Shown: positions 1-28,040 of the stretch, piece after piece
How the letters are laid out: every line of letters starts with the position of its first letter
Position numbering within the stretch: the first letter of the stretch is position 1
DNA from: Obrimoposthia wandeli
Taxonomy: Eukaryota
Assembly (NCBI GenBank): GCA_977020255.1
Contig: CDROCS010002597.1
Coordinates: 372,001 to 407,041 of the forward strand
Direction: 5' to 3'
Length of the DNA stretch: 35,041 nucleotides
The notes under the pieces: generated by a model
What the model was told of the DNA's origin: nothing
Databases searched by the model: none
What the model saw: only the letters and a program-made list of their open reading frames with translations
Position numbers and translations under genes: made by a program

Positions 1-305
1 TTCTGTGGGCCCCCAGGCCCTTTTACTATTTATATTATCCCCAAGGATGATAATTCTTCAGAATTATCCATAAATACTGTAATAGAAAATAGAAAAAGAA
101 AAATAACACAATAATCAAAAATTTTTAAATAAAACCGTTTAAGTAACAAAAAATGTTAGTACTATTATGTAAATCTAAATTAATTAGAAATAGAATAAAA
201 ATTTGATATATATATTTTTAAAGACGATTTAATGAAATAATATTAAAATAAAATCACCAGGAAACGCATCCTGAAATTTAATAATGGTTATTTTTAGATA
301 TAAAA

Positions 306-702
306 ATGAACAGATTGGCAAAAACTTGTAAAAAATGCAAAAAATTAGAGAAAAAGATTCGAGATGTTTCCAGACAGCATGACGACTACTATATAAAGAT
401 CACAACTCAAAATGAATCACTGAAACAGTTAATAAAACAAAGTGTGGAAAAAAAAATTGAATAATGATTTAACAATTGACGAACTAGAAGGGAGATTGGC
501 ACATAGTTTTGGCAGAATAGACAATTTAATACAACAAACTTTAAGTCAACGATCAACTATAGCCTCATTAAGAAGACAAATGATGACCTATAGCGACATG
601 ATAAACTTTTATTTGACCATTAATCCTACTATCCCAACTAATACAACACTTGATGATGGATATGACTCGGATATAAACATTGGTGAACAAAATTCTGGTT
701 AA
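306..702 (+). CDS. Putative ~131-aa coiled-coil protein, split by a 1-nt frameshift at an A9 run
   Basis: ATG at 306 reads MNRLAKTCKKCKKLEKKIRDVSRQHDDYYIKITTQNESLKQLIKQSVEKK. Removing one A from the A9 run (448-456) joins it to ORF 442-702 (LNNDLTIDELEGRLAHSFGRIDNLIQQTL...). Helical, heptad-like composition; no family recognised. Confidence 0.45.
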
Positions 703-869
703 ACTATAATCATACATCCTTCTTTTGTACAAATTGTATAACTTTTGTTAATAAGTTTATTTTCATGACAAATCCCACATACTGCATGGATAAGACTGAT
801 ATTTTTATAACTTTAAGACTGTGAAATAATTATATTATTTTATTCAACTAACAAATCTATTAAAGCAGA

Positions 870-2039
870 ATGGATAACAATCACCTGGATACGACTCCAG
901 ACCAGCTCACTCGGTCAGATCAAACAAAAAGCACAGCAAAGATAGAAAGAGGAAAAACGGAAAATATGCCAGAAAGGTGGTTTTTAGCAAAATTCTTGTA
1001 TCAAAACATGCGTCAGTTTAGCAGTGCATACTTTAGAAACAACGGAGGAAGAAAAATGTTTTCAAATCAAACATTTCTTCCTAATAAGTTAAAAATTACC
1101 ACAGAAGAAAGAACTAGCGCACTTATTTTTACCAATGAAAAAAGACCAACCCATATGGCTCTCAGTGAAATATTCCCCAACATTAATTGTGAAAAAATAG
1201 ATATTCACGTGGCACTAGGAGTAGCCCATTTAAAAACCAAATCAGATAAGACATTAAATTTTCTGATGATAGGAAATCACACCTACACCTTACAAGCAGC
1301 TCAATTAGAAAATCAATATAGCATAAAAATAGGAAGAGGACCAAATCTATTATTTATAGAAAACATAAGAAAAGCAGAAGAACCTCAACAAATAACCCTT
1401 TTTGAATTAAAAAACGCACAGAAACCAGCAATTTTATTCCTCGATTGCGAAATGGTGATATCAGTAGATAAACAGCCAGTTTTAGCAAGTGTTTCTATTA
1501 TAAATTACATAGGTAACGTAATTATAGATACACTGTGCGTAACTAGAGACAGAGTAAGAAATTACGTTACTAGAATAACTGGACTGTCAGATAGAAAGTT
1601 ACAAGGATGTAGAGATGCTGATGAAGTAATTGAGGAAGTAAAAAACATTGTGTATGGTAACATCATCGTAGGTGTGGGACTAACAAACGATTTAAAAGCT
1701 TTACGCCTACAGAAATGGATGTTATTCAACATTGTTGATTTAGGAATATCCAAAAGCATAAAATCAGAACTAAATCACAATCACCCAAATATTGGACTCG
1801 CCAACATGGTGCGGAAATACTTAAATATAGAAACACAAAAAGGAGTCCACACTAGCATGGAAGATGCAAATCACACCCGAAAAATTTTCATAATGAAGGA
1901 GGAAATGTTGATTAGAGAGTTTGATTTGACCGAGGTGATGAATCCACCATCTTGCGAGAACAACCCCAGTTCATCCTTCTCGCATAAGACCGGAAACTCG
2001 GAGTCCGGTACACAAAACTCCCTGATTTTGTTGGATTAA
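870..2039 (+). CDS. Intronless DEDDh 3'-5' exonuclease (REX4/ISG20-like domain) with an unrecognised ~185-aa N-terminal region
   Basis: 389-aa ORF. ExoI LFLDCEMV (D192, E194), VRNYVTRITGL, ExoII GVGLTNDL (D274) and ExoIII HTSMEDA (H327, D332) are all present. AATAAA at 2120-2125. Confidence 0.85.
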   Translation: MDNNHLDTTPDQLTRSDQTKSTAKIERGKTENMPERWFLAKFLYQNMRQFSSAYFRNNGGRKMFSNQTFLPNKLKITTEERTSALIFTNEKRPTHMALSEIFPNINCEKIDIHVALGVAHLKTKSDKTLNFLMIGNHTYTLQAAQLENQYSIKIGRGPNLLFIENIRKAEEPQQITLFELKNAQKPAILFLDCEMVISVDKQPVLASVSIINYIGNVIIDTLCVTRDRVRNYVTRITGLSDRKLQGCRDADEVIEEVKNIVYGNIIVGVGLTNDLKALRLQKWMLFNIVDLGISKSIKSELNHNHPNIGLANMVRKYLNIETQKGVHTSMEDANHTRKIFIMKEEMLIREFDLTEVMNPPSCENNPSSSFSHKTGNSESGTQNSLILLD

Positions 2040-2431
2040 GGTAGTATTGTTATTATTTTATTTCTGTTTTCATTTTTGTCTAAATTTTTAACGATATTTA
2101 ACCAGACATGATTGTGATTAATAAAACATTGATCAGTTGTAACATACAAACAACACTAGGTAACAATAGGAACAAGACAAAATAGTTTAACTAATAATTA
2201 AGATATAAATTATGATTCTGAGGACAGAGACTTTTATGACCCGGAGGATTGTTGGGAAAATATATTAAATAATTGTTTTAAAAAAGAAAAAGAAAAATAT
2301 AAAATTTTTAAAGAAATAAAAGAAAAAAGAGAATTAATTAATTAAAAATTAATTGGGAACTTTCCTTAATTAGGGAAAAGTTCCGATTTTTAGAATTGTG
2401 CACTTTGGCATTTTAGTCAATAGAGTGATCA

Positions 2432-2483
2432 ATCTCCGACGGGAAAAAAGCCCGTTTCGCCCTGCCGGGCTCATCAGGGAGAT
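2432..2483 (-). ncRNA. Type I hammerhead ribozyme (HHR1), intact core
   Basis: Minus strand: AUCUCC-CUGAUGA-GCCC(GGCA)GGGC-GAAA-CGGG(CUUUUUU)CCCG-UC-GGAGAU. It has a 6-bp stem I, 4-bp stem II, stem III and a GUC triplet. Predicted cleavage between 2438 and 2437. Confidence 0.9.
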
Positions 2484-2488
2484 GGCGT

Positions 2489-3042
2489 GTTATCTCTAAC
2501 TTCGCGGTGGATTCCGCGAAGCCAGAGATAACAATAATAAAGCCAGGGAAAAGATTTCCCTTTCATGTGCCGACGAATATCGTCGACATGTGGTGTTAGT
2601 GTGCGCAAGTGCACCATTCACACACACACACACTCACTCAACATTAACACATCACTCAACTCACTCATTCACTCTCACTACTCACTCAATCGCTCACACA
2701 ATCCCTTGCTCACTCACTCCCTACTCACCTATTCTTTGTGCATGTGTGTGTTTAATTTGGCATTTTACACCTGCCCAGAATTTTGAATGACGGTGAAATT
2801 TCCCGGCTGCACATGTGTGTGTGTGTGCAGAGCCGGGAAATGCCAGTTTCCTCTACCCAGGTCTTTTCCTAATGACGGTGAAATTTCCCGGCTGCACATG
2901 TGTGTGTGTGCAGAGCCGGGAAATGCCAGTTCTGGTGGTGTTTCGGGCAGGCAACGAGGATTGATAACTGCCGGTTTTCCCACCTGCCCATCTGCTTATA
3001 TCGAATCTATGCAGTCGAATTGCAGATATATAGACGGGCAGG
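2489..3042. other. GC-rich cluster of nested hairpins, including a 63/61-bp direct repeat
   Basis: Paired arms: GTTATCTCT 2489/AGAGATAAC 2532 enclosing CTTCGCGG/CCGCGAAG; GGGAAA/TTTCCC 2546-2560; CATGT-CGACGA/TCGTCG-ACATG 2564-2590; CCTGCCC 2770/GGGCAGG 2951; CCTGCCC-ATCTGC 2983/GCAGAT-GGGCAGG 3042. Direct repeats at 2786-2848 and 2871-2931 each fold via ATTTCCCGGCT/AGCCGGGAAAT. Confidence 0.75.
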
Positions 3043-3130
3043 AAAGAAATTGCTATATAATTTTACAATTGATAGAAACAAAAATTATTATGAAATTACC
3101 AAAAACACGAAACTATTATATTTAATTCAG

Positions 3131-3826
3131 ACAATTTTTGGGATCGTGATTTTGAATTGGAACACAAGTTGTGATTTTATGAAAATTTAAATATTATTGA
3201 AACTACAATTTTTGGGATCGTGATTTTGAATTGGAACACAAGTTGTGATTTTATGAAAATTTAAATATTATTGAAACTACAATTTTTGGGATCGTGATTT
3301 TGAATTGGAACACAAGTTGTGATTTTATGAAAATTTAAATATTATTGAAACTACAATTTTTGGGATCGTGATTTTGAATTGGAACACAAGTTGTGATTTT
3401 ATGAAAATTTAAATATTATTGAAACTACAATTTTTGGGATCGTGATTTTGAATTGGAACACAAGTTGTGATTTTATGAAAATTTAAATATTATTGAAACT
3501 ACAATTTTTGGGATCGTGATTTTGAATTGGAACACAAGTTGTGATTTTATGAAAATTTAAATATTATTGAAACTACAATTTTTGGGATCGTGATTTTGAA
3601 TTGGAACACAAGTTGTGATTTTATGAAAATTTAAATATTATTGAAACTACAATTTTTGGGATCGTGATTTTGAATGGGAACACAAGTTGTGATTTTATGA
3701 AAATTTAAATATTATTGAAACTACAATTTTTGGGATCGTGACTTTGAATTGGAACACAAGTTGTGATTTTATGAAAATTTAAATATTATTGAAACTACAA
3801 TTTTTGGGATCGTGATTTTTGAATTG
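3131..3826. repeat. 74-bp tandem satellite, ~9.4 near-identical units
   Basis: GGGATC recurs at 3140, 3214, 3288, 3362, 3436, 3510, 3584, 3658, 3732 and 3806, an exact 74-bp period. The unit contains the CACAA-G-TTGTG palindrome. Confidence 0.95.
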
Positions 3827-4183
3827 AATAAAAGTTATTTGCAAGTTATTGGACTTTTAACACAAAGACCAAAATAGAAAACCTCATCTCTGTAAAATCT
3901 AAGAGTAAAAATCAATATTTTCGTGCACACAAGATATGTATTAAAGATAAGATAGCCAAATGATGAGTTCTTCATGAATGCATGTGTCGAGATTAACAAT
4001 AGAATTGTGAACTCTGGATTTTTAAACATTTAATTATTAAAAAATTGTAATTATAATTAATTTTAAAATTTGATGTTTAATTATAGAATTGATGGAGAGA
4101 TTGTTAATTGGGATGTTGTTAATTAGAATTTAATAAATGCACTTTGATATTTTGTTTTTTTTATAAAAAAGAAAATTTTAACT

Positions 4184-4227
4184 CCAGACCGGCTAAGCCA
4201 GTTTCGCCTGGCTAGGCTCGTCAGTGA
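4184..4227 (-). ncRNA. Type I hammerhead ribozyme (HHR2), intact core, short stem I
   Basis: Minus strand: UCA-CUGACGA-GCCU(AGCC)AGGC-GAAA-CUGGC(UUA)GCCGG-UC-UGG, with a GUC triplet. Predicted cleavage between 4187 and 4186. Confidence 0.85.
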
Positions 4228-5710
4228 TGGGGCGAATATATAATGTATTTATCCAGAAATTCTGCCCAAGGAGGCAGAACAGCCAGAACAAGCGGTTTGG
4301 AGGACCGTTTCACTCTCCTCCGATATTCTCTTTTCACTGTGGCCTTCCTCTAACTGTAGTAGGGACAATCTTCTTTGCCAGTTCTACACAGCATCCCACT
4401 GGCGCCACTGTCGCTTCAATTCTGATGCTGCTACTTATCACAGCGGCAACAACAACAGCAGGCCGACATTTTTGTGTATATGCTCAGATACATGCAGAAT
4501 ACACCACACACGCACAATCTGTAACACAATGCATAATATCTTCCTATTCTCACTCCTCAACATCCTCTTACTGTCCTTCCTCTCTCAGACACAATTTTGT
4601 GTCATTGTGCCTGTATTTGGTAAATTGTATGCGTGTGTATATGGATCTCTGTGCTACATCGACAACATTGACTAGCAACAAACTTTGCTTGTCGGTTTAT
4701 CTCTCTCCTCAATTCCTCAACAGCTCGGACCAGCAATGCAATAACAGCAGTATCTATCTTTCTGGTTCAATCTAATTGTAACAATTTCAGATTCCATGTC
4801 ACAATTCTGTCTCTCCCTGTCTTATCTCTCATCTTTTGTGTGTGTGGAGAGGATGCATTCTGACAAACCTTTGATATGTGTTCGTCCATTACCGTCTGTT
4901 GCCACGCGGATGGAGGGGTTAACCATAGCCAGATGAAATTATGAGCCAAAACAGACAATTTCCCCCTCTCTTGGTCTTGGCAGCCAACAGCGCTACTTTC
5001 TTCACCAGTCCGTTCACAACAGCTTGAGTGCAGCCTTGGTACCAATAAAATTCTCTCTAATCGATATAAAACAGCAGTCATGCTGTTAATATCTTTCCAA
5101 ATTTGCCCAATAAATATAATTTATCAAGCATTATTTTTGAAATTAACTGTTATTTTATTCAACTATTTGAAACATCAAATGCTCATTTCTATTATTGTTA
5201 GATTAAAGGAAAGCTAAATTAAAACTAAATAATACATTTATATATAACGAATATTTAACCTCAAAATATTGAAAGTTAAAAATAAAATAATTAAAGAATA
5301 TGTTTTTTAAATAAATTAGAATAAGTTCTTTTAGATAAAGTGAGATCTTGGAGAGGTCTTTAAAATGTGTATAAAAATAAAAGTGTAAAAACACAGAAGA
5401 AAATTGAGACATAGAATTAAGGCAATCATTAAGAAAACGAGAAAGATTCTATAATCAGAATTCACAGTCCATTCGCGGAAGAAGAATCGTGACTGCTACA
5501 TTCCGATCAGCGACATCACGAACGACAACAATTTCTTACGATAACGCAGAAAATGCAATTAAAGCAGAAACGTCAAGTCTAACTGAAGGACTACAGAGAA
5601 GTCAATTTTACTTGAAGAAAAGCGTGAATACCAGGATATCGCATCAAAATGACAACGAAAATCGGTGAGGGAGAACGAAATTAAAACACATTTAAACTTA
5701 ATTGTTTTAA

Positions 5711-11242: not shown

Positions 11243-12040
11243 TCAGGCCTCGGGTTAGCGTCTCGTTGGTTAATTCTGGTGAAAGTTTAAATTCTCTAGA
11301 CTGGTGATGCTCCAAAAGCTTGTTGTGATACTAGAGATGGTGTTATTAAAAGTCTTAATCGTTTGAGTTGGAAAATATTTAGTTATATTCTAAACTTTAA
11401 CACCCATAAACTGTTACAATTTAAATCCGTAAGTTTTAAAGAATTTAAACATTTTGGAATTTTACATTCCTGATTATGTATATGAAGGAAATAGTTTCCA
11501 GCTTGAAATTGATCCCAGTCTGGCTTTTAAATATGATCTAGGATATTTGATTACTCCAATTCTAGATGAAGAACAATGGAATATCTCAATACGTCTCAAT
11601 GGATAATTTGCTGATGACGGGAAAATGCAGCCTCTTTGGACTTTGAAGCTATAAGATGTTTTATGATATGATGTTTTATTATAAGCCAATATGATGTTTT
11701 ATGTTTAATAAATGTTTTGAAAATAATTTTGACTCGTATTTTGTTTTACTCCTCTAAATTATATAGATCTGACCTAATTTTTCTCTTATAAATCTGACCT
11801 AAATATTTAACTAAAACATGTAGTAATCTCAAATCTTTCTTAAAAATAGTAGTAATATATTCACATATTATTTTAAATCTCGTCTGCGATAAGCCGATGG
11901 GGTCAATATGGATTCCCGTGGTCTTCTCTAATCACCTTTGAGATTCGTGGTAAATTTCAAAGTAAAATAAAAAATATGTGGGAGGAGGACCCCCCCTCCT
12001 ATTCGATGCTTTTTCAATTTTTCAAAAAAAAAATTTCCCT

Positions 12041-12145
12041 ACACACATACACGAAAATTCACTCCACACACATGCACGGTTTTAAAGGACAGTGGTAGCA
12101 ACCCCGGGGGAAGGGGGTGGATTAGACCGGAAACATCCACCTACT
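12041..12145 (-). mobile_element. Maverick/Polinton terminal inverted repeat end (5'-AGTAG on the - strand)
   Basis: Matches the reverse complement of 26775-26860 (CACTCCACACACATGCACGGTTTTAAAGGACAG...GTGGATTAGACCGG...CATCCACCTACT). Mavericks typically end in 5'-AG...CT-3', often AGTAG. Confidence 0.7.
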
Positions 12146-13373: not shown

Positions 13374-15203
13374 ATTACGAGTTCTATGATTATCTCCTTG
13401 ATGAAATAGATTTGTGATAACTTCTGATAACTTGTGATAACTTCTTTTATCTTCACTTCATCAATAGTTTCTTCTCTTCTAATCGCTGTTGGTGGTGATG
13501 TTGTTGGTAATGTTGCTGCTGCTGATGATGTTGCCACTGATGTAATTTTCTCCATTTTTCAGTTCAGAGTTGAAGGTTTTACTCTTATATACTAATCGAG
13601 GTTTGATTTCATTAGAGCATCAGTTTCATCATAACTGCATGATTTAATTGGAGTATTATTCAAATTTTTAATTTTACTTAACATCTCATGTAAATGTAGT
13701 TGATGATGTAACCTAAATATAGAGTTAAATTAACTACTAATAAAAATGACTTATTATTATTTTTCTTAATTAAAGCACCGAGAATAACTCATGCAAGATC
13801 TTGTAATGCATCCTGCACCTCTTTACAATCAATAACTTCATCCATTTATGATAAAGCAAATAAAATATTGTTTATAACTCAGAAAACAAAGAAAAATCTA
13901 TTTTAATAAGTGTTGAATTTCACCAGTATTACTGATTAAGTATGGAATTAAATAAGTAGTATTGATAAAGTATTGAATTAAATTGAGAGTTAATCCATTC
14001 TAGAGTGTCACCCTATTGTTGTGTAACGTTGTATTAATAATTTTTAAAATAAATATAGTTAAAATAAAGTCGCAAGACAAAATTCCATTTTAATATTGAC
14101 TACCCCTTGCATAATATTCGGATTAACTAACCTATAGGTCAGCTGAGTATTAACTCACGTGGCGGTGATCCAAACCCTGGTGTACTCAGAGGATAACTAA
14201 GCCCCGATGTTAAATTATTTGATTAGGATAAAATTTGTCTCATGTTCGTTAGATATCATAGCAAATGGTAAAACTGTTATATGAAAAAACGGAATCCAAA
14301 TTGTTATTTTCTAAAAATGTTCAATATCCAAAATTAAATTCGTGTCTACCAAAAATTGTGTCATTAACAATACTGTCTTTACTGCAGACATATCTGCGAA
14401 TATTCACAATGCCAACTACTGCAAACAGGGACACACATAGGGACATGATAACGTCCAACAATGATAGCAGCAGAACACTAGCACAGTTTTAGTATACATT
14501 TACGATGATATTAGAGATTAAATTGTGCTGACACAGAACGAGAAGAAAACAATGGGAAATAGCACAGAAGAGATTGTCAGGTTGAGAAATTTGACGTATC
14601 TCGATAGTGAAAAATACTGCGGCAACACCGCTATGAGATGGAGAAAAGATAGAAGGCTGCACATGGATGTGGTCTGTACGGAGGAATATGTTCGTTAGGT
14701 CATAGAGGGAGAGTGTTATACCATGGAGAAAAGAAACAGCTCCACCTGATGGAGAAATACAGGGAAAGAGGCGGCTTTAGGAGAGATATAATCAGTTGAC
14801 CACTGCCAGCTAAAAACGCTGTCCAACTGATCCGTAACTCATGTACCGAGAATGTATACCACCGCGAAATTGTTGTTGCTGTTGGGTATAGAAGGAAATC
14901 GATTGAAACACCGATTGGCAGGAGAGATGGAACTGCATTAGGCACAACACAAACGACTGCAGACAAGTGGATCACATATGTCTCTCCATGTACCGGCTCG
15001 ACTAGCGGAAGCAGCAGACTGTCATCCACAGCCGACCGATTTGGATGACAGAGGAAGATTGTGAGAAGGACGGTGGAGGAGGACGATGTAGAAGAAACCG
15101 GGACCACTAGAGATTGGTTTGTGAGGCTGCTGTTGCTGGGCGGAAAAGTATTTGTTGTCAAACCACTTTATCTTGTTAGATTTATCTCTGACATTATGTG
15201 CCC

Positions 15204-15254
15204 CCTCCCTGACGAGCCTGGCAAGCCAAAACGGGGGTTTTCCCCCATCAGAGG
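15204..15254 (+). ncRNA. Degenerate hammerhead ribozyme (HHR3), probably inactive
   Basis: CCUCC-CUGACGA-GCCU(GGCA)AGCC-AAAA-CGGGGG(UUUU)CCCCC-AUC-AGAGG. Lesions: stem II mismatch (15226), G12>A (15228), C-A mismatch in stem III (15247) and a stem I mismatch. Flanks match HHR2 (ACATTAT..GCCCC upstream; GAG(G)TTAAAATT downstream). Confidence 0.7.
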
Positions 15255-15343
15255 TTAAAATTGTTTTCTTCCCTGATTGTGGTCACCTCAGTCAAATATC
15301 AATTTAAATGATTTGACATAAATAAATTTTAAATCCCAACACT

Positions 15344-15686: not shown

Positions 15687-16144
15687 ACATATACACTGAG
15701 AGTATATGTAGAAATGATGAACTTTTAAAGTAAATTTGTAAGGACTTTTAACTTTTAAAAAATTTGAACATATTTCTTTCTCAAAAGGTTTGCTTTTGTA
15801 TTTATGTTAAAAATACAAAAAGTACGTTCTTAGATAATTTTGAAAGTGTTTACAATACGGATTATTTAATGAAGAAAATGTACATTTTCAAAAAGACACT
15901 CTTTTTTTTAAGATGCAAAACATCAATTATTTCTTATTTGTTGATATCAGTTTTATAATTCATTTTAGTTGTTATAATAAAAAGTATAATTAATTTTCTA
16001 TTAGTTGTTTTAAAATATGAAACTATAAGAACATAGCAAATAAAAATTCAAATCATTTTGAAATACGTTAACAAATTTTTAAAGTAATTAAAATATATTT
16101 TTTGTTGATAATTTGAAAATTATTTAATACCATTATTCTGCATA

Positions 16145-19100
16145 ATGAGTGTAGAGAATGCAGGTTGGAAAATCAATCCTGGATACAGTACAAACGTACT
16201 GATAAATAATTGGTTTGAAGAACGATTACAAGTGAGAGTGTTTTAGTTGATAATTATATATTTTATTGTGTGTTCAGTATGACAAAGAGCTGCAGAATCA
16301 CTCTACCACCTATCGTACTAGTTTCAATCGCGGTTCGAATCCCTTTCCTGATGTCATAAATCGTCGACGGAATTGGCTGAGAAGTGACGGAGTGGGCCCA
16401 GACTTTTTGTTGAAGCACCACGGTCACGTGTATGAAGATTCGCGAATCACCTGGTACGACCAGGACTTCAACAAGCGGGAGCGACGAGGCAGGAATATTC
16501 TGCCTCCTCTACGCCAGTGGGATAGCAGCACTATGCACTGGATCCCAGAGAAATCAGACTTTCCCATTTACGGTGCGAGCAATCGATATTTCATCATCAC
16601 ATTCACCTTCATAATTGGGAAACGCAGTTTAGACATCGATCCCAACTTGTAGGTCAAATTTCATGAGTGTGGACGGATATAGAAAATATATTTTTCTGTT
16701 GCAGAAATGTTGAAACCCAGGCGGCGTCAGCTTTAAGTTGAAATATATCCCAAATTTCTGGAGATATGTAAATGAAACTTTGCATATTTAATATAGACAT
16801 CGATCAAAACTTGCACCCTAAATTACGTCATCTTTTCCAAACGGGATTCAGTCGGGATTCAACAAAAACAATTTTTCACTGAGTAATAAAATTCTGATGG
16901 AACTGAAATTTGGCAAGCAACTTGTGATCGATGTCTGGCCTCCATTTCCAAAGTTTCGTTCAGAAATATTTATTCCTTCTGGAGATATTCTCCCGCAAAG
17001 CCGGTTTGACCCGCATTTATACATTTCTGAAAGTACATTATTAAGGGAATTCATAAATAATAAACCATCAAATTATCTATGTGATCACGGAGTCTTTTGG
17101 AGTGATTTTCAAAAAGGTTAAAAATGATTTTATCGCTTTGACCATTACCGACAAATAATACTTCGTTCATTGTTAATATTTTATTTAAATAACATTTTCA
17201 AAATATCTTGTTCTCGGTATGATTTAAGAATCGTTTTATTTACATTTTCCTTTCTTAGCTATTTAGGATTATTATTTTTTCAACAAATTATAGCTTCATT
17301 TTACATGCATTTTGAAAGTTGTTTTAATTAATAGTAAACATAACAACATTTTTAAACTCATTTTAAACAATTTATTTACGCAACAATTTATCAAACATGG
17401 ATCGGAAAATTATTTTGTTTTTGTTTTTGTTACTGGTAGTCAATAATTTTGTTTTGTTTGTTAGATATTTAGCTTCAGAAATGTATAAATGCTGGTCAAA
17501 CCGGCTTTGCGGGAGAATATCTGCGGAGGAATAAATATTTTTGAATGAAACTTTGGAAATGGTGGCCAGGCATCGATCACAAGTTGCTTGCCAAATTTCA
17601 GTTCTATCAGAATTTTATTACTCAGTGAAAAATTGTTTTTGTTGAATCCCGGCTGAATCCCAGATGGAAAAGATGACGTCCAAAATTTGGGTTTAGACTG
17701 ATTGTTTATCTCAGTAAAATTAACTTGAAAATATGATATGAAAGTTTGGGCCACGGTGAAAAATCAGATGAAACCGGAGCTGTGTAGTCACTACCCAAAA
17801 TCCGACTCCAACTCCAAGAAAACTCCGAATCCACAGTCGCTTCCACTTTTAAGCTACATAATCAAATGTCCTCCTATACATACATACGCTACTCTACTGT
17901 ATATTTAGAGCAATTTGAGAATTTGCCTAATAATAGTACACATCTCCACTTCATTGAAGCAGCAATACCATCTACAATTGGCCCCTTTCTTTGGGACAGT
18001 TGAAATTTATGGTTCTTCGACTCTTTCAAGAAAATTCCTGGTGTTAAATCATCAGATTGAAATATTTTAGTCTGCAATTGAGTGATGAATCAGCTCTGCC
18101 AATTCAGACCTCTTTGTCCATTGAGGCTCGGCCATATCCACAGGAAAATGATTCGGGCCCAGCAAGCGCTGACTCATTAAGTAGGTACTTCTCCAGCGTA
18201 AAGTTTGATCCGTCATTGAGCTCTTCCCAGCGCCTCTTTTAACAAATAATCCAGTTTTGGTGTTCTGGCAGCGGGACTACATTTCTTGTCAATCAGATCT
18301 GTAAAATAAAAATAGTGACGAAAAATCATCTCTCACATTCTGTAGTTTTCAGGGTTTCTTCGGTTGTATACTAATATATTTTGCAAAGATGGAATGGCTC
18401 TTAAACGGTAATTTAAACACACCTTTCGAAATTGCGCCTGCTAGTTGTTACGGTCTTATTATGGATGTCACATTATAGTTGCATTACTTTTGTGAAGTTT
18501 TTATATTTTAGGGTCGGAGTTTATTCGGCGCTGGGCAAGGGTTATGACCGAGAATTTTTTCTCACACAGAAACTTTTTATCTGTAGTAATTTTCAAACAA
18601 TTAATTTAATTAACAAAATGAATAGGACATAGGGAAATATACGATAAGATTATAAGTAAAGAATACAAATACATCCGTGGCTATTACCAGAATCAAGTAA
18701 AAATATAAATGAGTGCAAATGATCAAAATTGTCTATCTACATTTTCCCTTTCTTCGCGGCTCAGCTTTCAAACATGAACAAACTCTCAGAGGACATTTGC
18801 AGTAACGTTGTCTTTGGCAGGAGTCCCTTCTCCAAGGCTATATGATCCGGTTCTTGTTCAACTTGAATTTTGCTGCAGCGTTCCAATAGCACAATTCGAT
18901 ACATCGCCTGCGGTCACAGCTCCCATAACATTTGCTAATATCACTCAATATCCCCAGTATCACACCGGTCACTGTTCACACTGCGCTGGTTCCCCCAGGA
19001 GCATAATTTGAGATTTGCAAAAATAGGCGCTGAGGGAGATTTACACTTTTAGGGAACTTAAAAATTAAATGGTAAACTGAACTCTTTAACTGGAAAACTC

Positions 19101-22100
19101 CTTCATAACGTCTTACTTTTCTTTCTATCCTCCTCTTCAATCCATAGAGTCCTTTTGAAAAGGAAATGATCAAGACGACTCGACAAATCAGAGTACAAAA
19201 GCTCGTCTTTGAAACGTTGCTGTCACGCACCAATGACCTAAGTTTCAGTGCCATATCACCAATACCTCTTTCAACACATCGCTGACTTTGCAGCTGTCTG
19301 AAATGTCCCTTAATCCGGATGAAGTTTGTAAAATTGATGCCAACTTCTGGAAATGTTAGAAAATGATATCAGACCTTAAAAGTCTTTCTAGTATCGTTCA
19401 GCATTTCAAAACAGCAATAATTATATTCGATTTCGTATTACAAAGTCCAAGGAAACTTGCAATTATCTCTACCATTTTAATTTTTTAGAAAAATATTTAG
19501 AGACCTTATATTTTTATTTTCTGAATAGCAAAGTCTTCAGCTGCTTCTTGAATTTTTCAATATTGTTTTAGTTTTTATTATGTTATTTGAGTTTTTTGAC
19601 TAATCTGCTGTTATTATCGTTGCTTCTAAAATGCTTATACATGTTTGCTGCACCAGGCTCGAGAAGATTTTAAAAATATTTGAGATTTTGTGAGAGAATA
19701 CATTTTTTGATAAAAAGTAATTTATTGAAATGAATTCTGACATTGATCGGTAGCCAATAAAGCTTCATCAAATTTTCACTTCTGCTAGCACTTTTCTTTA
19801 GTTAATTTAAAATCACAATATTAGACTGTTGTAACACTAAAAGTAAGAATACGGACTCGAATATATTAATCTAACTCCCAAATCCAATATGTCGTCAATT
19901 CAGATCTGCATGTTCTTCGCTTTACTACTTATTTGGCGACATCAAGTCGTGAGAAATAAAGGTGTTCAATACTGTTTGACGCGCCTTGATTTGGATTGAA
20001 TGTCAGTTCAAAAAGTGTGGTGGCAAATGTGAGTAAAGTTTTGTCGACGAATAACCGAGTGCATGAAGGAACGGATTCTTATGTCGATGACATCGTGGTC
20101 AAGGAGGTTCGAAACCTTTTAGATGAATACGGTTTTGAATCAAAGCAAGCGGAACCATTGTCTGGAGTACTCGTGCTTGGGTTGCGTGTGTTTCTAGAAG
20201 CTAACCTTATGTCATGGATAATGGACAATATGTTGACGGGCTTTGAAAGCGCAATTACTTGCAGAACACATTTTTCCTTGTGTGGTATGTTGTTAGGTCA
20301 TTTCCCTGACACAGGATGGCTGAGGCCGGAAACAAGTTACATAAAACGATTGACAAATGGAATGAAGTGGAATAATGTTGTTGATGCAAATGTAATGGTG
20401 TTAGTAGAAGAGATGTGGGCGCGTGTTATAAAGAATGATCCGTACATGGAATATGGTCATTTTCAAATACATGCGCAGGGACTGTTTGGTGTGATCCGAG
20501 TTGTCTGGCGATCGGTGTTGTGGTCGACATCGGAGGGGATGTCGTGTAAGATTTCAATTAGTTGCGGAAAGTTAATGACGGGTCACATATTAACCCTGCC
20601 GAGTTGGAGTCCGTCATTAAAGGATTGAATTGTGCCATCAAGTGGGGTTTGTCTCAAATCACTGTGATGACAGATTCTTCAACTATGTACGGGTGGTTGA
20701 ATGTTAAAACAACTGGTCCATATATAAAGTGAAAACTCATGGTTTAGGAGAAGCTTTGGCACATAGACGAATGTCCATGGCGAAAGATTTGATAAGTGAA
20801 TGTCGTCCTGGTGTAGTCGTGTGGTTTGTTAAGTCAGCACAAAATGAAGCAGATGAACTTACCCATGTTCCACATAGTTGGTTAGCAAAGCGCTGCATTG
20901 CAAACATAGCGCGTAGCGGGACATCAAACGCGTGAAGCCCATACGCAAGTTGAATCATTTTAGTATTTATAAGACGTTGTTTGTGGTGAACCACCAATAT
21001 CCCGACTTAAAAGTAATGCGTGGGGAAATTAAATCCATTGCACAGAACATTGAAAGATGCTTGCATGTCGATCCTTCTCAGTTAAATGGAAACATGGAGA
21101 GTTGGCTGTAGAAAGAAGTTGGAGTCGTTTGGCATGTGACGTGGCACATTATCTTGAGAAACGTCACCTGACAATTATTGACTGTGGTCCTAGCTGTTTA
21201 TGTGTGAGGAAGTTGTTAAAAGACGAAACGAAGTTGGAAGTGTCCAGTGCAATGGCGGATGTTTTCAGGGAGCATGGACTACCGGATGAGCTGTTATTCG
21301 ATAATGGTGCAACTCTCCGTTCCCATATGTTTGGCGAATTGTGTAGCAAAATGAAGGTGAAGGTTTATTTATCGCAGTACATATCGACCGTCGGGAAATG
21401 GCATTGTGGAGTGGGTACACCGTACTGTGAAGCAGATGGCGGCTAGAAGGGATGTGGATGTACGAGACATGGCTTAATGGTTAAAAATAACCCCGCGTGA
21501 TGAAACAAAAATTGAATCAGTACCCGTGAATGTGTTGTACAAGTATGAGTGGCGGTATCTGAATGTTGTTGGCATTGCATTCTCTGTTGCTGCAACATCG
21601 AATTAATTTGTCGTTGGGTCCAAGGTTTTCGTTAAACCACCAGGGATGCGATGTATAACACATTGGCCGAAAGGAACCGTCACTGGAAGTGAACGGCATC
21701 TCGAGGCACGTGTCTGGTTTGAGGTTGATTCCTGATACAATGGATGAGGTGGATCGAAACGTTGAGACGACTCATGCGGAGATATTTGACGAAGAGGTTC
21801 AACCTGATGAAGTGATGATCGGGGAGGAAAGCGGCGCTGGGGTGACAGATGCAAACAAAGTTCCCGGCGCGAGCGGTAGACCTGCTAGGCAAACGAGACG
21901 ACCAGCGTTTCTAACAGATTACATCGAATAATGATCTTGAGATCATGTGTGGCTTTTCTATTTATTTAAACAAATCGCCAATCACAACTGTGACATCTAA
22001 AAGTAACAATTATACATTTTGTAATTTATGTATGTAATTTTACTTAAAACTTTGATTTATATTATATTTTTAGATTTATTACGATGAAACAGCAATCAAC

Positions 22101-24096: not shown

Positions 24097-25139
24097 AACA
24101 ATGATCTGCTAGCATGATTATGATGTCAACCTCATTATCATACTTCAGTGGTTTTATCTTTACTATTACTTTTGTATTGTCAACATTGATAAAGGGGTTT
24201 TGTTTAGTATAATCATGAATATAAATCTGATCGATTTGAATATTTAACATTAAAATAAAGATGTTTTATTTTAGTAAATACTTTATGTTAAAGAATAACA
24301 TCTAAATAAGATGAATTATTCAATATAAAAAAATTTCTAAAAACAGTTTTGTATTTTTAATGTAAAATACGGATTTTGAGGAAAAAATCCCAATTGGGCA
24401 ACTCTGAATTTTAAAATAATCAATTTTAAATAAAGTCAAATATTTATAAAATGTTATTTTTTGTCATTCATAACTACTGAATACCTGTATAAACGGAGAA
24501 AATTTGAAAATCATAATATTAATTTGTTTAAATTTTTTTAAATAGTCAAATTTCAAACGAAACTTGTTTTGAATGAATTGTTTTCTACAATTATGACTGT
24601 ATTTAATAAATACGTTTTACTATTTTTTTCATATAAATTAAACTAACATTAATAATATTTATGCTTTTGAATTATTGTGAACTTCAAATTCGTATTTGTA
24701 ACCAATATTTTAACTTTTAAAATAGTATCTGTTAAAACTCAACATTATATTTATTTAAAATATAATAAACTTAAAGCAAGACTTTCTATAATTTTTTTAT
24801 TACAAAGTTACTTTTGATGTATATATTTTTAGAAAATATTCACAATCAATTTAATATTTTTTGCCTATTAAATAAAAAAATGATTAAGATTGAAGGAAAT
24901 TGCTTGAAATTAATCCTATGTAAGTGGTCTAAAATATACGTAATTATGTTTACATTTTTTAGAAAATTTATTTAACTTCTTCTATTTATAAAAATAAACC
25001 AATAAAATATATAAATTATAAAAAATTCTTTAAATGTGGACTTTTAACATTTGATTAAACTAAATTATAAGAATAGCAATAATGTAGCCTAATATGTAAA
25101 AACATTATTATTTATTACTCAAAAGTGCTTCGTGCTTTC

Positions 25140-25420
25140 CAAAATTTATTCTGAATAGTAAAGTCTTCAGCTGCTTCTTGAATTTTTCAATATTAATTTT
25201 CATTCATTGTTGTAAAGATTCAAAGCTCTAAATATAAATATTTCATAACTCATTTTGTTATTTGAGATATTTTGATTAATCTGCGGTAATAATCGTTTCT
25301 CTTAAGATGCGCGAGGCTCGAGAATATCATATAAATATTTGGGCTTTTGTATGAAAATACATATTTCTGGCATTGATTGGTAGGTAAATTCTCACTTGTA
25401 CTCGAATTTTTCTTTAATTT
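25140..25420 (-). mobile_element. LINE (CR1/L2-like) 3'-end remnant, second copy
   Basis: Shares CTGAATAG(C/T)AAAGTCTTCAGCTGCTTCTTGAATTTTTCAATATT with the 19.5-kb copy. Minus frames read FRALNLYN and IEKFKKQLKTLLFR. Confidence 0.5.
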
Positions 25421-26983
25421 GAATACAATTCTAATTGTTAGGGGCTTTGTTAAATATTTTTAAAAATGATTTAATTTATAAGTTGGAATATTAAACTAAA
25501 AGAATTCTGAAAATCAAGTCTTGGTGTAATAATGTGATAGCGTAGATCTCAGCAGTAAGATTTATTTTATTTGTTGATAAATATTTTCCTTTAAACATTT
25601 GACAATTGATTGTAATGTTTTCATTGATTTCATGACCAATGTTCTTTATTTTAGATTTTAAATTTATAATAATTTTCGTGACATGTACAAAACTTCTTTT
25701 TTTAAATGGTTTGTCTATTTCTTAGACCAAAATAATAAGGCCTCAGTTTTATTTTCACCAATCTTCAATTATATTGATTTCATCTATATACATATTTCCA
25801 TCATAGAATCTATTAAAAATATATATTGACAACATTATTTAAAATAAATTACTGTAGCCAACATTTAACTACTTCCTGATCAATGTAACACACTGTAAAT
25901 GAAGACATAAACATTAAGTGAACGACAAGTTAAACAACTTTGGATTTAGCACTAGTGACATTAAAAGTAAAGTGTTTTTCTTTGATCAATATATTAATTG
26001 AAATCAGCCAAATGGAAGTCACGACATTTTTACAAACTCAATAAGTTTTTGTATAACCCATAAGATCCCCTAATATATTGAAAATATTGTTGATAATTAA
26101 TTATATACTGAAGAATTCTCTAACATTGCTACATGATTTTGATGATAATATCACACATTTTCAAGTGCAAATCTTTTGATAAGGAAAACCTTTTGAAAAT
26201 TCATTAGTAACGTAAAGTGTACTTTTTCAAACTAGAAATAAGAAAATAGAACAACATGCAAAAAGTATTGTGTGCTGTACTCGTTTTATATTGGCCGTTT
26301 TAAGTGTCCAACACATTATAGCAGAAAGTCGTCTTGTTTTGTATTTTTAGAAAAGCACACTTTAGACTACTATATATGGAATTTTGTAGTCGGGAGTACC
26401 CAATTTCTGTGCTTGAGTCGAAACATATCTGAAACAAGGGCCCGCAAGTAGAAATCAGGATTAGTGCTCTAATCTATTTTTGATATTGGAAACACTTCAT
26501 CACTCCTATGAGCTTAGAAATACTGATATGGTTACCGAGTTATAATTTTGGTTTAACGACTATTGTTTTGAGATTGAATCAATGTGCATGAAACCATTTA
26601 AACCTCAATGTTATTCAAGTTAATTATAAGTGGAAGTACTTCAACCCATTTTTAGTACCGATCGCCGTAAAGTAGCAATCAGTCTCTTAATGTCCTATTA
26701 AATTGTTCTACTACCGTGGCCTTAGTAAAGGGATGTCTGTCTTTCAGGACAAAGTCTTCCGATCACTCATCCTGAGTAGGTGGATGAGTCCGGTCTAATC
26801 CACACCCCTGTCCTTTAAAACCGTGCATGTGTGTGGAGTGGAATTTTGTGTAGGTGTGTGGAGTGAAATTTTGCTCCACACACATGCACGGTTTTAAAAG
26901 ACAGGGGGGTCCCAAAAAAAGGCTCGGGATGGGTGTATATCATAGACTTCCTTGGGTGTTGGGTGTTGGAGGGTGGGTGTAAA

Positions 26984-27399
26984 TCGATGGGTGTTGGGTG
27001 AAAGTCGATGGGTGTTGGGTGAAAGTCGATGGGTGTTGGGTGAAAGTCGATGGGTGTTGGGTGATGGGTGAAAGTCGATGGGTGTTGGGTGAAAGTCGAT
27101 GGGTGTTGGGTGAAAGTCGTTGGGTGTTGGGTGAAAGTCGATGGGTGTTGGGTGAAAGTCGATGGGTGTTGGGTGAAAGTCGTTGGGTGTTGGGTGAAAG
27201 TCAATGGGTGTTGGGTGAAAGTCGGTGGGTGTTGGGTGAAAGTCGATGGGTGTTGGGTGAAAGTCGATGGGTGATGGGTGAAAGTCGGTGGGTGTTGGGT
27301 GAAAGTCTATGGGTGATGGGTGAAAGTCGATGGGTGATGAGTGAAAGTCTGTGGGGGATGGGTGAAAGTCTGTGGGTGTTGGGTGAAAGTCGTTGGGTG
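26984..27399 (+). repeat. 21-bp G-rich minisatellite (GATGGGTGTTGGGTGAAAGTC)n, ~20 units
   Basis: Read directly from the sequence. The repetitive ORFs at 26815-27549 are translations of this array. Confidence 0.95.
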
Positions 27400-28040
27400 A
27401 GGGGTGTAAGTTGGTGGGCGTTGGGCCGGTGGTGGTTCACCACCAACACTACACCACACAACACCACATCACACCACACCACAAACAACACCACACCACA
27501 CCACACCACAAACAACACCACCCACCGAAACACTCCGCCCGCCCCATAGGGGCGGGCTTCATTCTCGCGAAAATAACTACAAAAACATGCGCTACAGTAT
27601 TTTTCTTTAACTTTACCTCTCACAACTACACATGTAGACAACCCGTGTCACACCCCAGCCCCAAACATACACCGCACACCGCCCGCCCCTTCGGGGCGGG
27701 CTTCATTCTTGATCTTTAGGCACGAAAAACATTACAAAAAATAAATGATTTGAATCAGACGCAATTTTTTGCGCCAAATTTAAAATTTTCAAAATGGCTT
27801 TAAAACAAAAAAATAAAATATTAAAATTTAAAAAGAAAAAATCTTAAAATTTTACACATAATTTTTTACAATAATTTTTATAGTTTAAAAATATAATTTT
27901 ACACAGAACTTTTATACTTTAGAATTAAAATTTTAAACTTAGAAAAAGACAAAGACGAATTGGATACAAATATTTATTAAACAAAAGAGAAAAATTAGGT
28001 ACAATAAATTTGTGACATAAATTCAAACATACAAAAACAA

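What the first reader, a model, noticed from the sequence alone, without database searches (positions are those of the whole stretch)
306..5080. Candidate ribozyme-bearing mobile element carrying a coiled-coil ORF and an intact DEDDh exonuclease
Seen: two intronless + strand ORFs (coiled-coil, DEDDh nuclease) sit directly next to two - strand hammerheads, a hairpin cluster and a satellite. A third family hammerhead at 15.2 kb suggests the module is dispersed. Known: type I hammerheads mark Penelope-like elements and retrozymes, and the giant Terminon elements of bdelloid rotifers combine hammerheads with coiled-coil ORFs and DEDD(y) exonucleases. Inference: this may be one end of a Terminon-like or new ribozyme-delimited element that uses a DEDDh nuclease, with its ORFs antisense to the ribozymes. 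Any RT would have to lie left of the window.
Basis: partly seen in the sequence, partly recalled or inferred. Interest (0 to 1): 0.85.

Follow-up and report, generated by a model that had tools for sequence, protein, structure and literature searches.

The report
Retroelement exonuclease gene beside stray hammerhead ribozymes
The intact exonuclease gene looks like an accessory gene at the tail end of a virus-like (gypsy-type) retrotransposon, a kind of accessory gene I found no report of, while the neighbouring hammerhead ribozymes are old copies of a separate repeat and not part of a Terminon-like element.

Summary
The sequence features are largely real. ORF 870-2039 (+) is an intact 389-aa protein: a cupin-like N-domain plus an ISG20/REXO4-type DEDDh exonuclease. 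The "coiled-coil ORF" is two pieces (306-464, 442-702) split by a 1-nt frame change in an A9 run. HH1 (2432-2483, -) is a convincing type I hammerhead. HH2 (4187-4224, -) keeps the core but has a weak helix I. HH3 (15.2 kb, + strand) is mutated. The hairpins and the 74-bp satellite are confirmed.

The Terminon reading fails. The exonuclease sits in a distinct clade whose members, wherever the contig is long enough, lie just downstream of gag-env-PR-RT-RNaseH-IN polyproteins of Ty3/gypsy, Burro-like/GAG-ENV-POL elements. These often carry small coiled-coil-looking ORFs. None of ten related contigs holds a hammerhead. HH3 has no linked exonuclease. The ribozymes are antisense to the ORFs, have a stable helix III, and lack adjacent telomeric repeats.

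Best reading: window 1-~2350 is the 3' accessory-gene block of an LTR-type retroelement whose pol lies left of the window. It abuts a repeat-rich stretch with decayed copies of a dispersed hammerhead repeat. The exonuclease as a retroelement gene appears undescribed: a new variant of a known kind, of moderate interest.

The parts
1..114 (+). Open frame reaching the left edge of the window (37 codons, then a stop). Possibly the C-terminal end of the upstream retroelement ORF.
   Evidence: Read from the sequence. Too short to test. The + strand is A-rich like the ORFs that follow.
306..464 (+). First piece (52 aa) of the small helical, coiled-coil-like ORF. It ends at TAA just after the A9 run (448-456).
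   Evidence: Heptad contrast was reached by 9 of 200 shuffles.
442..702 (+). Second piece (86 aa) of the same ORF, in the +1 frame. It has no ATG near its start, so it needs a 1-nt frame change in the A9 run to be made.
   Evidence: AlphaFold gives a single helix over residues 12-60 with pLDDT above 90. Weak Pfam SlyX hit, E 0.003.
870..2039 (+). Intact 389-aa ORF with two domains. The cupin-like beta-barrel N-domain covers about residues 60-167 (nt 1047-1370). The ISG20/REXO4-type DEDDh 3'-5' exonuclease domain covers about residues 186-346 (nt 1425-1907).
2202..2343 (+). Acidic then K/E-rich open stretch of 47 codons without an ATG. It may be a remnant of the small ORF that follows the exonuclease in relatives. 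Low confidence.
   Evidence: Read from the sequence. Relatives carry 79-89-aa ORFs 90-370 nt after the exonuclease. No sequence similarity was found.
2385..2491 (-). Hammerhead repeat copy 1. HH1 proper is 2432-2483, with C17 at 2438 and predicted cleavage between 2438 and 2437. An AT-rich tail follows.
2488..2533 (.). Stem-loop with 20-nt arms (90% complementary at DNA level; all positions pair in the RNA fold), directly 5' of HH1 in ribozyme sense.
2615..2728 (+). Degenerate (TCAC)n/(CACTCA)n microsatellite-like tract, C-rich on the + strand.
2786..2924 (.). Two 85-nt direct repeats, each forming an 11-bp GC-rich hairpin around a (TG)n core.
   Evidence: (family D9).
3131..3826 (.). 74-bp satellite, 9.4 copies, 99% matches between copies.
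4132..4238 (-). Hammerhead repeat copy 2. The HH2 core is 4187-4224 with C17 at 4187. Catalytic core and helices II and III are intact; helix I is weak.
4239..5090 (.). GC-richer (about 44%) non-coding stretch 5' of HH2 in ribozyme sense. The ORFs here (4224-4775 +, 4767-5081 -) have no family match.
   Evidence: There is a weak, low-complexity similarity to 2610-2757.
15195..15314 (+). Hammerhead repeat copy 3 (core about 15194-15246), mutated at G12 and in helix II. No exonuclease or coiled-coil ORF lies nearby.

Best explanation
Two unrelated things lie side by side.

(A) Window 1 to about 2350, + strand, is the 3'-terminal accessory-gene block of an env-carrying Ty3/gypsy retroelement of the Burro-like / GAG-ENV-POL errantivirus-like type. 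Its gag-env-pol lies left of the window. The block encodes a small helical, coiled-coil-like protein, here broken by a 1-nt frame change in an A9 run. It also encodes an intact two-domain protein: a cupin-like N-domain plus an ISG20/REXO4-type DEDDh 3'-5' exonuclease.

Inferred mechanism: the protein is made from the retroelement transcript and trims 3' ends of RNA. The substrate could be the element's own RNA or primer (3'-end processing). Alternatively it could be host small or double-stranded RNAs, as a counter-defence. The activity and the substrate are inferred, not shown.

(B) From about 2350 to 5090 lies a repeat-rich stretch holding two decayed, same-orientation (- strand) copies of a dispersed hammerhead-bearing repeat, plus hairpins, a microsatellite and a young 74-bp satellite. 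HH1 probably still self-cleaves in - strand transcripts. HH2 is doubtful and HH3 (15.2 kb) is dead. The ribozymes are not a component of the exonuclease-bearing element.
For: Exonuclease clade:
- The exhaustive protein search gave 1930 hits, but only a few share the N-domain.
- In a tree of 86 exonuclease domains, the window protein falls in a 21-member clade (SH-aLRT 100). This clade is separate from 65 cellular REXO4/ISG20-like sequences, including Mesocestoides REXO4 and a JGI 'RNA exonuclease 4'.

Contexts of clade members:
- L003, L007/L008/L102 and L009: the exonuclease ORF lies 100-360 nt downstream, on the same strand, of polyproteins with Retrotrans_gag, Monjiviricetes-type fusion glycoprotein, aspartic protease, RVT_1, RT_RNaseH and integrase.
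- L001: it follows an integrase C-terminus/transmembrane ORF.
- L006: it is preceded by two coiled-coil-looking ORFs and followed 2.1 kb later by gag with a zinc knuckle.
- This architecture matches published Burro elements (PMC6431247, section 7) and GAG-ENV-POL errantiviruses (PMC13524379).

Composition:
- The + strand of 1-2040 is A-rich (A 0.40-0.46, AT skew 0.17-0.27), like the relatives' exonuclease and pol ORFs and unlike the host CFAP107 exon.
- The A-rich block ends near 2400.

Exonuclease identity:
- Pfam RNase_T.
- PDB sequence hits to ISG20 and ISG20L2.
- Foldseek TM 0.80-0.81 to ISG20/ISG20L2, and cupin hits for the N-domain.

Hammerheads separate from the element:
- They are antisense to the ORFs.
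- No hammerhead was found in the eight related contigs scanned (L001-L004, L006-L009).
- There are only three copies in the window, sharing about 110-150 nt.
- HH3 has no exonuclease nearby.
Against: - No pol, gag, env or LTR is visible in the window itself, so the assignment rests on the contexts of 30-35%-identical relatives.
- Five of the ten related contigs are too short to show neighbours.
- No LTR pair could be shown even in the 13.5-kb relative L102.
- The 3' boundary of the element in the window is not defined. There is no clear polypurine tract followed by TG.
- The exonuclease ORF is intact while the neighbouring small ORF is broken. That pattern would also fit a domesticated gene.
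- HH1 lies only 393 nt past the stop codon. At 3 copies per 35 kb, I estimate the chance of such proximity at roughly 5-10%, which is low but not negligible.
- The host species is unknown.
Confidence: 0.6

Rival explanations
1. The block from about 2350 to 5090 (or part of it) is the 3' LTR, or LTR-derived sequence, of the same retroelement. The hammerheads would then be physically part of the element, encoded antisense in its LTR. HH3 with its GC-richer flank would be a solo LTR of a related family.
For: - Burro-type elements have kilobase-sized LTRs and tandem repeats (PMC6431247).
- The GC-richer island 2400-5090 starts right where the A-rich coding block ends.
- All three hammerhead copies have 0.6-0.85 kb of GC-richer sequence on the same side.
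- Copies 1 and 2 share TTAATTGGGA about 135 nt from the cleavage site, next to purine-rich runs.
- Possible 5-nt flanking repeats exist: TTAAT at 2349, 4104 and 5088, and ACACT at 14475 and 15339.
- Weak similarity between 2610-2757 and 4493-4626, z 4.8.
Against: - None of the eight related contigs scanned has a hammerhead 3' of the exonuclease, nor a comparable satellite.
- The termini do not give a canonical TG...CA.
- TTAAT occurs about 4 times per kb in this window, and ACACT is expected by chance in the interval searched.
- The flanks of the three copies are otherwise not alignable.
- The two copies are about 70% identical, not what LTR-internal duplicates of one insertion would show.
Confidence: 0.15
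2. The exonuclease is now a host gene. It would be a retroelement-derived (or independently retroposed) intronless gene kept by the host, no longer part of a mobile element.
For: - The ORF is intact and keeps every family-invariant residue, while the adjacent small ORF is frameshifted.
- No pol is visible.
- An AATAAA lies about 80 nt after the stop codon.
- Two relatives (L004/L005 and L104) have no long ORF in the 0.5-1.2 kb upstream.
Against: - It belongs to a clade whose informative members are all retroelement-linked.
- It has retroelement-like A-rich composition.
- The frame change is in a homopolymer and may be an assembly error.
- Only 870 nt of upstream sequence is available.
Confidence: 0.15
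3. One reading: one end of a Terminon-like or new ribozyme-delimited element in which hammerheads, the coiled-coil ORF and the exonuclease form one dispersed module.
For: - Hammerheads, a helical ORF and a DEDD-family nuclease do lie within 5 kb of each other.
- Terminons combine such parts (PMC6431247).
- A C-rich (TCAC)n-like tract lies about 130 nt from HH1 on the ORF strand.
Against: - The ribozymes are on the opposite strand from the ORFs.
- The nuclease is DEDDh, not DEDDy.
- Elements carrying its relatives have gypsy-type RT and integrase, not Athena RT.
- HH1 has a stable 5-bp helix III, unlike the minimal PLE/Terminon hammerheads (PMC7761336).
- No (ACACCC)n or (TCACCC)n lies directly downstream of a hammerhead in ribozyme sense.
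- No hammerhead was found in the eight related loci scanned.
- HH3 has no linked ORFs.
- No RT or GIY-YIG match was found in pieces flanking the ribozymes.
Confidence: 0.04
4. On the - strand, HH2 and HH1 delimit a 1.75-kb retrozyme-like non-coding unit (4186 down to 2438). This unit would be excised by double self-cleavage and possibly circularised.
For: - Two same-orientation hammerheads with intact catalytic cores lie 1749 nt apart.
- The interval is non-coding and highly structured near HH1.
- The helix III of HH1 is stable, as in monomer-active invertebrate retrozyme ribozymes (PMC7761336).
Against: - Metazoan retrozymes are tandem units of 150-300 bp (PMC7761336). Here the units are not tandem and the flanks are only about 70% alike.
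- Helix I of HH2 is weak and Rfam does not score it.
- 700 nt of the interval is a young satellite expansion.
Confidence: 0.1

Closest known systems
Burro giant gypsy-like LTR retrotransposons of planarians, and GAG-ENV-POL errantiviruses of Platyhelminthes, Nematoda and Bryozoa (PMC6431247; PMC13524379)
   Same: Relatives of the window's exonuclease sit at the 3' end of elements with the same unusual layout. The layout is gag (+ zinc knuckle), a mononegavirus-type fusion glycoprotein in frame between gag and pol, then PR-RT-RNaseH-IN. One relative adds ubiquitin-like and ankyrin domains, and there are extra accessory ORFs.
   Different: Neither paper mentions an exonuclease ORF in these elements. 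'Exonuclease' is absent from PMC13524379 and is used only for Terminons in PMC6431247. The window shows only the accessory block; no pol or LTR is visible.
DEDDy exonuclease ORF3 of bdelloid rotifer LTR retrotransposons (Juno, Vesta) and Athena/Terminons (PMC5408684)
   Same: A stand-alone DEDD-superfamily 3'-5' exonuclease ORF placed downstream of pol in an LTR retroelement, sometimes alongside coiled-coil ORFs. The function is unknown; 3'-end processing has been proposed.
   Different: Those are RNase D/WRN-like DEDDy enzymes. This one is an RNase T/ISG20/REXO4-like DEDDh enzyme (H-x4-D) with an added cupin-like N-domain, in a different retroelement lineage.
ISG20, ISG20L2 and REXO4 cellular DEDDh RNA exonucleases
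   Same: Best sequence and structure matches for the C-terminal domain. All five catalytic residues are present.
   Different: The window protein belongs to a separate, well-supported clade. It carries an N-terminal cupin-like domain absent from those proteins, and it is retroelement-linked.
Type I hammerheads of metazoan non-LTR retrozymes, and Schistosoma Sm-alpha-type repeats (PMC7761336)
   Same: HH1 is type I (open helix I) with a canonical core and a stable helix III. It is dispersed as a short repeat in an AT-rich invertebrate-like genome.
   Different: The copies are not in 150-300-bp tandem arrays, they are solitary and about 70% alike, and no circular RNA evidence exists.
Terminons / Athena Penelope-like elements
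   Same: A loose co-occurrence of hammerhead, coiled-coil ORF and DEDD nuclease.
   Different: The defining features that could be tested were all not met (see Membership tests).

Membership tests
Terminon / Athena (endonuclease-deficient Penelope-like element) | Athena-type PLE reverse transcriptase as the polymerising ORF | tested here: not met
   No RT is in the window. The elements carrying the closest relatives of the exonuclease have RVT_1 + RT_RNaseH + integrase, i.e. Ty3/gypsy type. ORF pieces around the ribozymes have no RT or GIY-YIG hit. The sequence left of the window is unseen.
Terminon / Athena (endonuclease-deficient Penelope-like element) | Sense-strand hammerhead at the 3' end, followed immediately by reverse-complement telomeric repeats (ACACCC)n or (TCACCC)n (PMC6431247) | tested here: not met
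   The hammerheads are antisense to the ORFs. In ribozyme sense they are followed by an AT-rich tail. A (TCAC)n-like tract lies on the other strand, about 130 nt away.
Terminon / Athena (endonuclease-deficient Penelope-like element) | Minimal type I hammerhead lacking a stable helix III (PMC7761336) | tested here: not met
   HH1 has a 5-bp helix III and HH2 a 6-bp helix III, each with a closing loop.
Terminon / Athena (endonuclease-deficient Penelope-like element) | DEDDy-type exonuclease accessory ORF | tested here: not met
   The ExoIII motif is H327-x4-D332, which is DEDDh. The Pfam RNase_T score is above its cut-off, while DNA_pol_A_exo1 is just below its cut-off.
Env-carrying Ty3/gypsy retroelement (Burro-like / GAG-ENV-POL errantivirus-like) | gag - fusion glycoprotein - PR - RT - RNaseH - IN upstream on the same strand | not testable with these tools
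   This would lie left of the window. It is met in relatives L003, L007/L008/L102 and L009, and partly in L001 and L006.
Env-carrying Ty3/gypsy retroelement (Burro-like / GAG-ENV-POL errantivirus-like) | Long terminal repeats with a polypurine tract and target-site duplication | tested here: inconclusive
   The 5' LTR is outside the window. Purine-rich runs lie at 2281-2333, but there is no clear TG...CA boundary. The candidate 5-nt flanking repeats may be chance. No terminal repeat was found in L102.
Env-carrying Ty3/gypsy retroelement (Burro-like / GAG-ENV-POL errantivirus-like) | The exonuclease groups with the retroelement-linked clade rather than with cellular exonucleases | tested here: met
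   The 21-row clade has SH-aLRT 100 and holds the window protein plus P0002-5, 7, 10-12, 19 and 40. The N-domain is shared.
DEDDh (RNase T / ISG20 / REXO4) 3'-5' exonuclease | ExoI D-x-E, ExoII D, ExoIII H-x4-D all present | tested here: met
   D192, E194, D274, H327 and D332 are present.
DEDDh (RNase T / ISG20 / REXO4) 3'-5' exonuclease | Profile and fold match | tested here: met
   Pfam RNase_T scores 31.1 bits against a cut-off of 24. ISG20 matches at E 3.5e-9. Foldseek TM is 0.80-0.81 to ISG20L2/ISG20, on a model of pLDDT 68.6.
DEDDh (RNase T / ISG20 / REXO4) 3'-5' exonuclease | Metal-dependent 3'-5' nuclease activity | not testable with these tools
   Needs a biochemical assay.
Hammerhead ribozyme, type I | Conserved core CUGANGA...GAAA...H17 with helices I-III, helix I open | tested here: met
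   HH1 meets every element, and its minimum-energy fold is the hammerhead. HH2 has the core and helices II and III, but helix I is only about 3 bp. HH3 fails at G12 (G to A) and has a helix II mismatch.
Hammerhead ribozyme, type I | Rfam RF00163 gathering score (34 bits) | tested here: inconclusive
   HH1 scores 32.4 bits, just under the threshold. It was not reported at gathering level. HH2 and HH3 were not reported.
Hammerhead ribozyme, type I | Self-cleavage | not testable with these tools
   Needs an in vitro transcription and cleavage assay.
Metazoan non-LTR retrozyme | Tandem 150-300-bp repeats, each with a type I hammerhead, expressed as circular RNA | tested here: not met
   Copies lie 1.75 kb and 11 kb apart, are not tandem, and are about 70% alike over about 110-150 nt. 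Circular RNA cannot be tested here.

The most novel reading that the evidence does not exclude
The cupin-plus-DEDDh (ISG20/REXO4-like) exonuclease is a conserved, so far undescribed accessory gene of flatworm-type env-carrying gypsy retroelements, often paired with small coiled-coil ORFs. It would be a DEDDh counterpart of the DEDDy ORF3 of rotifer retroelements. It may act as a counter-defence nuclease that degrades host small or double-stranded RNAs, as ERI-1/SDN-type and arenavirus/coronavirus DEDDh nucleases do (this comparison is from my own knowledge). Alternatively it may process the 3' end of the element's RNA.
Probability: 0.35. Interest if true: 0.65.

Novelty: new variant of a known kind. 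Interest (0 to 1): 0.45.

Why it matters
- Retroelements that capture host-type nucleases show how mobile elements extend their toolkits. Until now the documented case was the DEDDy nuclease of rotifer LTR elements and Terminons.
- A second, independent capture would suggest that 3'-end RNA trimming gives retroelements a recurrent advantage. Here it is an ISG20/REXO4-type DEDDh RNA exonuclease with its own N-terminal domain, in a different retroelement lineage and probably a different phylum.
- Because ISG20-type enzymes are antiviral in vertebrates, a retroelement-encoded relative is a testable candidate for counter-defence against small-RNA silencing.
- The hammerhead part is ordinary. Dispersed type I hammerhead relics are common in invertebrate genomes.

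Tried and rejected
- Rfam at gathering thresholds on the whole window gave nothing. Only a local, permissive search recovered HH1.
- A word-based protein search with the ORF and with a family alignment found almost nothing. The exhaustive search was needed.
- Exact look-ups of eleven window ORFs in the protein collection found none, so the source genome is not indexed.
- A CFAP107 search for the host taxon returned only one unnamed ENA protein. Sample accessions are not cited in any held paper.
- tblastn of relatives' pol and env against the window gave no hit.
- There is no second exonuclease or coiled-coil copy in the window.
- Pfam scans of ORF pieces 5' of each hammerhead found no RT, GIY-YIG or other domain.
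- A metagenome scan with a hammerhead helix II pattern gave 92 loci. All that matched were generic GC-rich hammerheads without the family tail, so they say nothing about the repeat's identity.
- No LTR pair was found in L102, L009 or L006.
- No satellite lies 3' of the exonuclease in relatives.
- Small ORFs next to the exonuclease in different loci share no detectable sequence similarity.
- The Terminon primary paper could not be read. Its features were taken from reviews (PMC6431247, PMC8557442, PMC7761336).

Full report
**What is in the sequence**

- The window is AT-rich (about 30% GC).
- ORF 870-2039 (+) is an uninterrupted 389-codon ORF. With about 7% stop codons expected from the local composition (my arithmetic), this is not chance.
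- It matches Pfam RNase_T above the curated cut-off (31.1 vs 24 bits). It carries all five DEDDh residues: D192, E194, D274, H327, D332.
- The 'coiled-coil ORF' upstream is two pieces, 306-464 and 442-702, in different frames. They join only through a 1-nt change in the A9 run at 448-456.
- The second piece has no early ATG, so it cannot be translated on its own.
- AlphaFold gives the second piece one confident 49-residue helix. A crude heptad test is only weakly positive. So it is helical and coiled-coil-like, but not proven.

**The ribozymes**

- A loose core pattern finds 10 matches against 1.7 expected. Only two of them have paired helices.
- HH1 (2432-2483, -) scores 32.4 bits on Rfam Hammerhead_1, where the gathering score is 34, with E 1e-5 in a 1.9-kb search. 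It folds into the canonical junction with a 6-bp helix I, 4-bp helix II and 5-bp helix III.
- A stem with 20-nt arms sits directly 5' of HH1 (z -5.4).
- HH2 (core 4187-4224, -) has an intact core and helices II and III, but only about 3 contiguous pairs in helix I. Rfam does not report it and its minimum-energy fold is different.
- HH3 (about 15194-15246) is on the + strand. It has lost G12 (CAAAAC) and has a helix II mismatch. It is most likely inactive (established knowledge of the hammerhead core).
- A covariance model of the three copies finds no further copy in the window.
- Their similarity covers the ribozyme plus a tail of about 60-135 nt, roughly 70% identity.
- The hairpin cluster, the (TCAC)n-like tract and the 74-bp x 9.4 satellite are confirmed.

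**What the exonuclease is**

- An exhaustive search of 1.84 billion representatives gave 1930 hits. Most match only the nuclease domain.
- A handful share the N-terminal 150 residues too: P0002-P0005, P0007 and P0019.
- In a maximum-likelihood tree of 86 nuclease domains, the window protein lies in a 21-member clade with SH-aLRT 100. That clade is separate from 65 cellular REXO4/ISG20-like sequences, including Mesocestoides REXO4 and a JGI 'RNA exonuclease 4'.
- The closest solved structures by sequence are ISG20, ISG20L2 and SDN1.
- An AlphaFold model from the 6-sequence family alignment (pLDDT 68.6) superposes on ISG20/ISG20L2 at TM 0.80-0.81. It also shows a beta-rich N-domain (residues about 60-167) whose matches are cupins at E 1e-4 to 1e-5.

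**Where its relatives live**

I fetched the contigs of ten clade members.

- Retroelement context on the same strand (five members):
  - L003 carries a polyprotein of more than 3299 aa: ubiquitin-like, Monjiviricetes-type fusion glycoprotein, ankyrin, PR, RT, RNaseH, IN. The exonuclease follows 100 nt later.
  - L007/L008/L102 carry gag, fusion glycoprotein, PR, RT, RNaseH and IN in 2871 aa. The exonuclease and then an 88-aa ORF follow.
  - L009 has the same order with a decayed pol.
  - L001 has an integrase C-terminus/transmembrane ORF followed by the exonuclease.
  - L006 has two coiled-coil-looking ORFs, the exonuclease, a small ORF and, 1.5 kb after that small ORF, gag with zinc knuckles.
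- Uninformative (five members):
  - L002, L004/L005, L103, L104 and P0005's contig are contigs of about 2-4 kb.
  - None shows a host-gene-like context.

This gag-env-pol order, with a mononegavirus-type fusion protein in frame, is the published signature of two groups. One is planarian Burro elements (PMC6431247, section 7). The other is GAG-ENV-POL errantiviruses of flatworms, nematodes and bryozoans (PMC13524379). Neither paper mentions an exonuclease. Four further literature searches found none either. The nearest precedent is the DEDDy ORF3 of bdelloid LTR retrotransposons (PMC5408684).

**Evidence from the window itself**

- The + strand of 1-2040 is A-rich (A 0.40-0.46, AT skew 0.17-0.27).
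- The relatives' exonuclease and pol ORFs are A-rich too (A 0.36-0.41). The host CFAP107 exon at 16.3 kb is not (A 0.27).
- The A-rich block ends near 2400, where GC jumps to 44-54%.
- An open frame reaches the left edge (1-114), consistent with an upstream ORF.
- No pol, env or LTR is in the window.

**Why the ribozymes are not part of it**

- They are antisense to the ORFs.
- No hammerhead was found in the related contigs that were scanned, including 1-5.6 kb downstream of the exonuclease.
- HH3 has no exonuclease or coiled-coil ORF nearby.
- The stable helix III of HH1 is unlike the minimal PLE/Terminon ribozymes (PMC7761336).
- No telomeric reverse-complement repeat follows a hammerhead (PMC6431247).
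- ORF pieces 5' of each ribozyme have no RT or endonuclease match.

**What remains open**

- The junction between the A-rich block and the hammerhead unit lies at about 2345-2385. This leaves no obvious room for a 3' LTR, unless the GC-richer 2350-5090 block is LTR-derived.
- Some hints point that way:
  - Burro LTRs are kilobase-sized and the elements carry tandem repeats.
  - All three hammerhead copies have GC-richer sequence on the same side.
  - Copies 1 and 2 share TTAATTGGGA and purine runs.
  - Possible 5-nt flanking repeats exist.
  - There is a weak low-complexity alignment.
- These hints could all be chance, so I give this rival 0.15.
- The host species could not be identified. The 30% GC, a roughly 44-nt intron and a cilia gene fit a flatworm or similar ciliated invertebrate.

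**Verdict**

- The Terminon reading is not supported, but 'one end of a retroelement with the RT to the left' probably is.
- The exonuclease as a retroelement accessory gene is a new variant of a known kind and of moderate interest.
- The hammerheads are ordinary relics, one of them probably still active.

Noticed in passing
window 27520-28241 and 34294-35032: Long inverted repeats (225 nt at 98%, further arms at 77-95%) bracket about 6 kb. The bracketed stretch contains an intact intronless 277-aa dual-specificity phosphatase ORF (33161-33994). This looks like a terminal-inverted-repeat or foldback element carrying a captured gene.
   Followed up: partly
window 26974-27425 and 27438-27533: A 21-bp minisatellite (TGGGTGAAAGTCGATGGGTGT, about 21 copies) is followed by a CACCA-rich tract. 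The overlapping ORFs on both strands there are repeat artefacts.
   Followed up: no
window 26799-26911 and 12028-12096: A near-perfect hairpin with 45-nt arms scores on several microRNA models but far below their thresholds. A related copy (84-88% identity) lies 14.7 kb away. It is probably a small hairpin or MITE-like repeat.
   Followed up: no
window 19996-21446: Fragments of another retroelement on the + strand (DUF7047 and an integrase core) lie in a strongly G-skewed 20-22 kb stretch. They are not similar to the pol of the exonuclease-bearing relatives.
   Followed up: partly
window 16139-16652: A host gene for cilia- and flagella-associated protein 107, with an intron of about 44 nt. Its only database relative is an unnamed ENA protein at 71% identity.
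   Followed up: partly
window 16825-17038 and 17467-17679: Inverted repeat with arms of 153 and 61 nt (90-94% complementary) just downstream of the CFAP107 gene. It may be a foldback or MITE.
   Followed up: no
window 448-456: An A9 homopolymer lies exactly at the frame change that splits the small helical ORF. It could be an assembly error, a real mutation or a slippage site.
   Followed up: partly
L003:1-9900 and L102:2060-10675: The related retroelements encode single giant polyproteins (more than 4057 aa and 2871 aa). The viral-type fusion glycoprotein lies between gag and protease. L003 also has ubiquitin-like and ankyrin domains, as described for planarian Burro elements.
   Followed up: partly
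window 19475-19569 and 24949-25199: Short direct repeats (51 nt at 94%, 42 nt at 71%) lie about 5.5-5.6 kb apart. They might mark the ends of another repeat unit.
   Followed up: no
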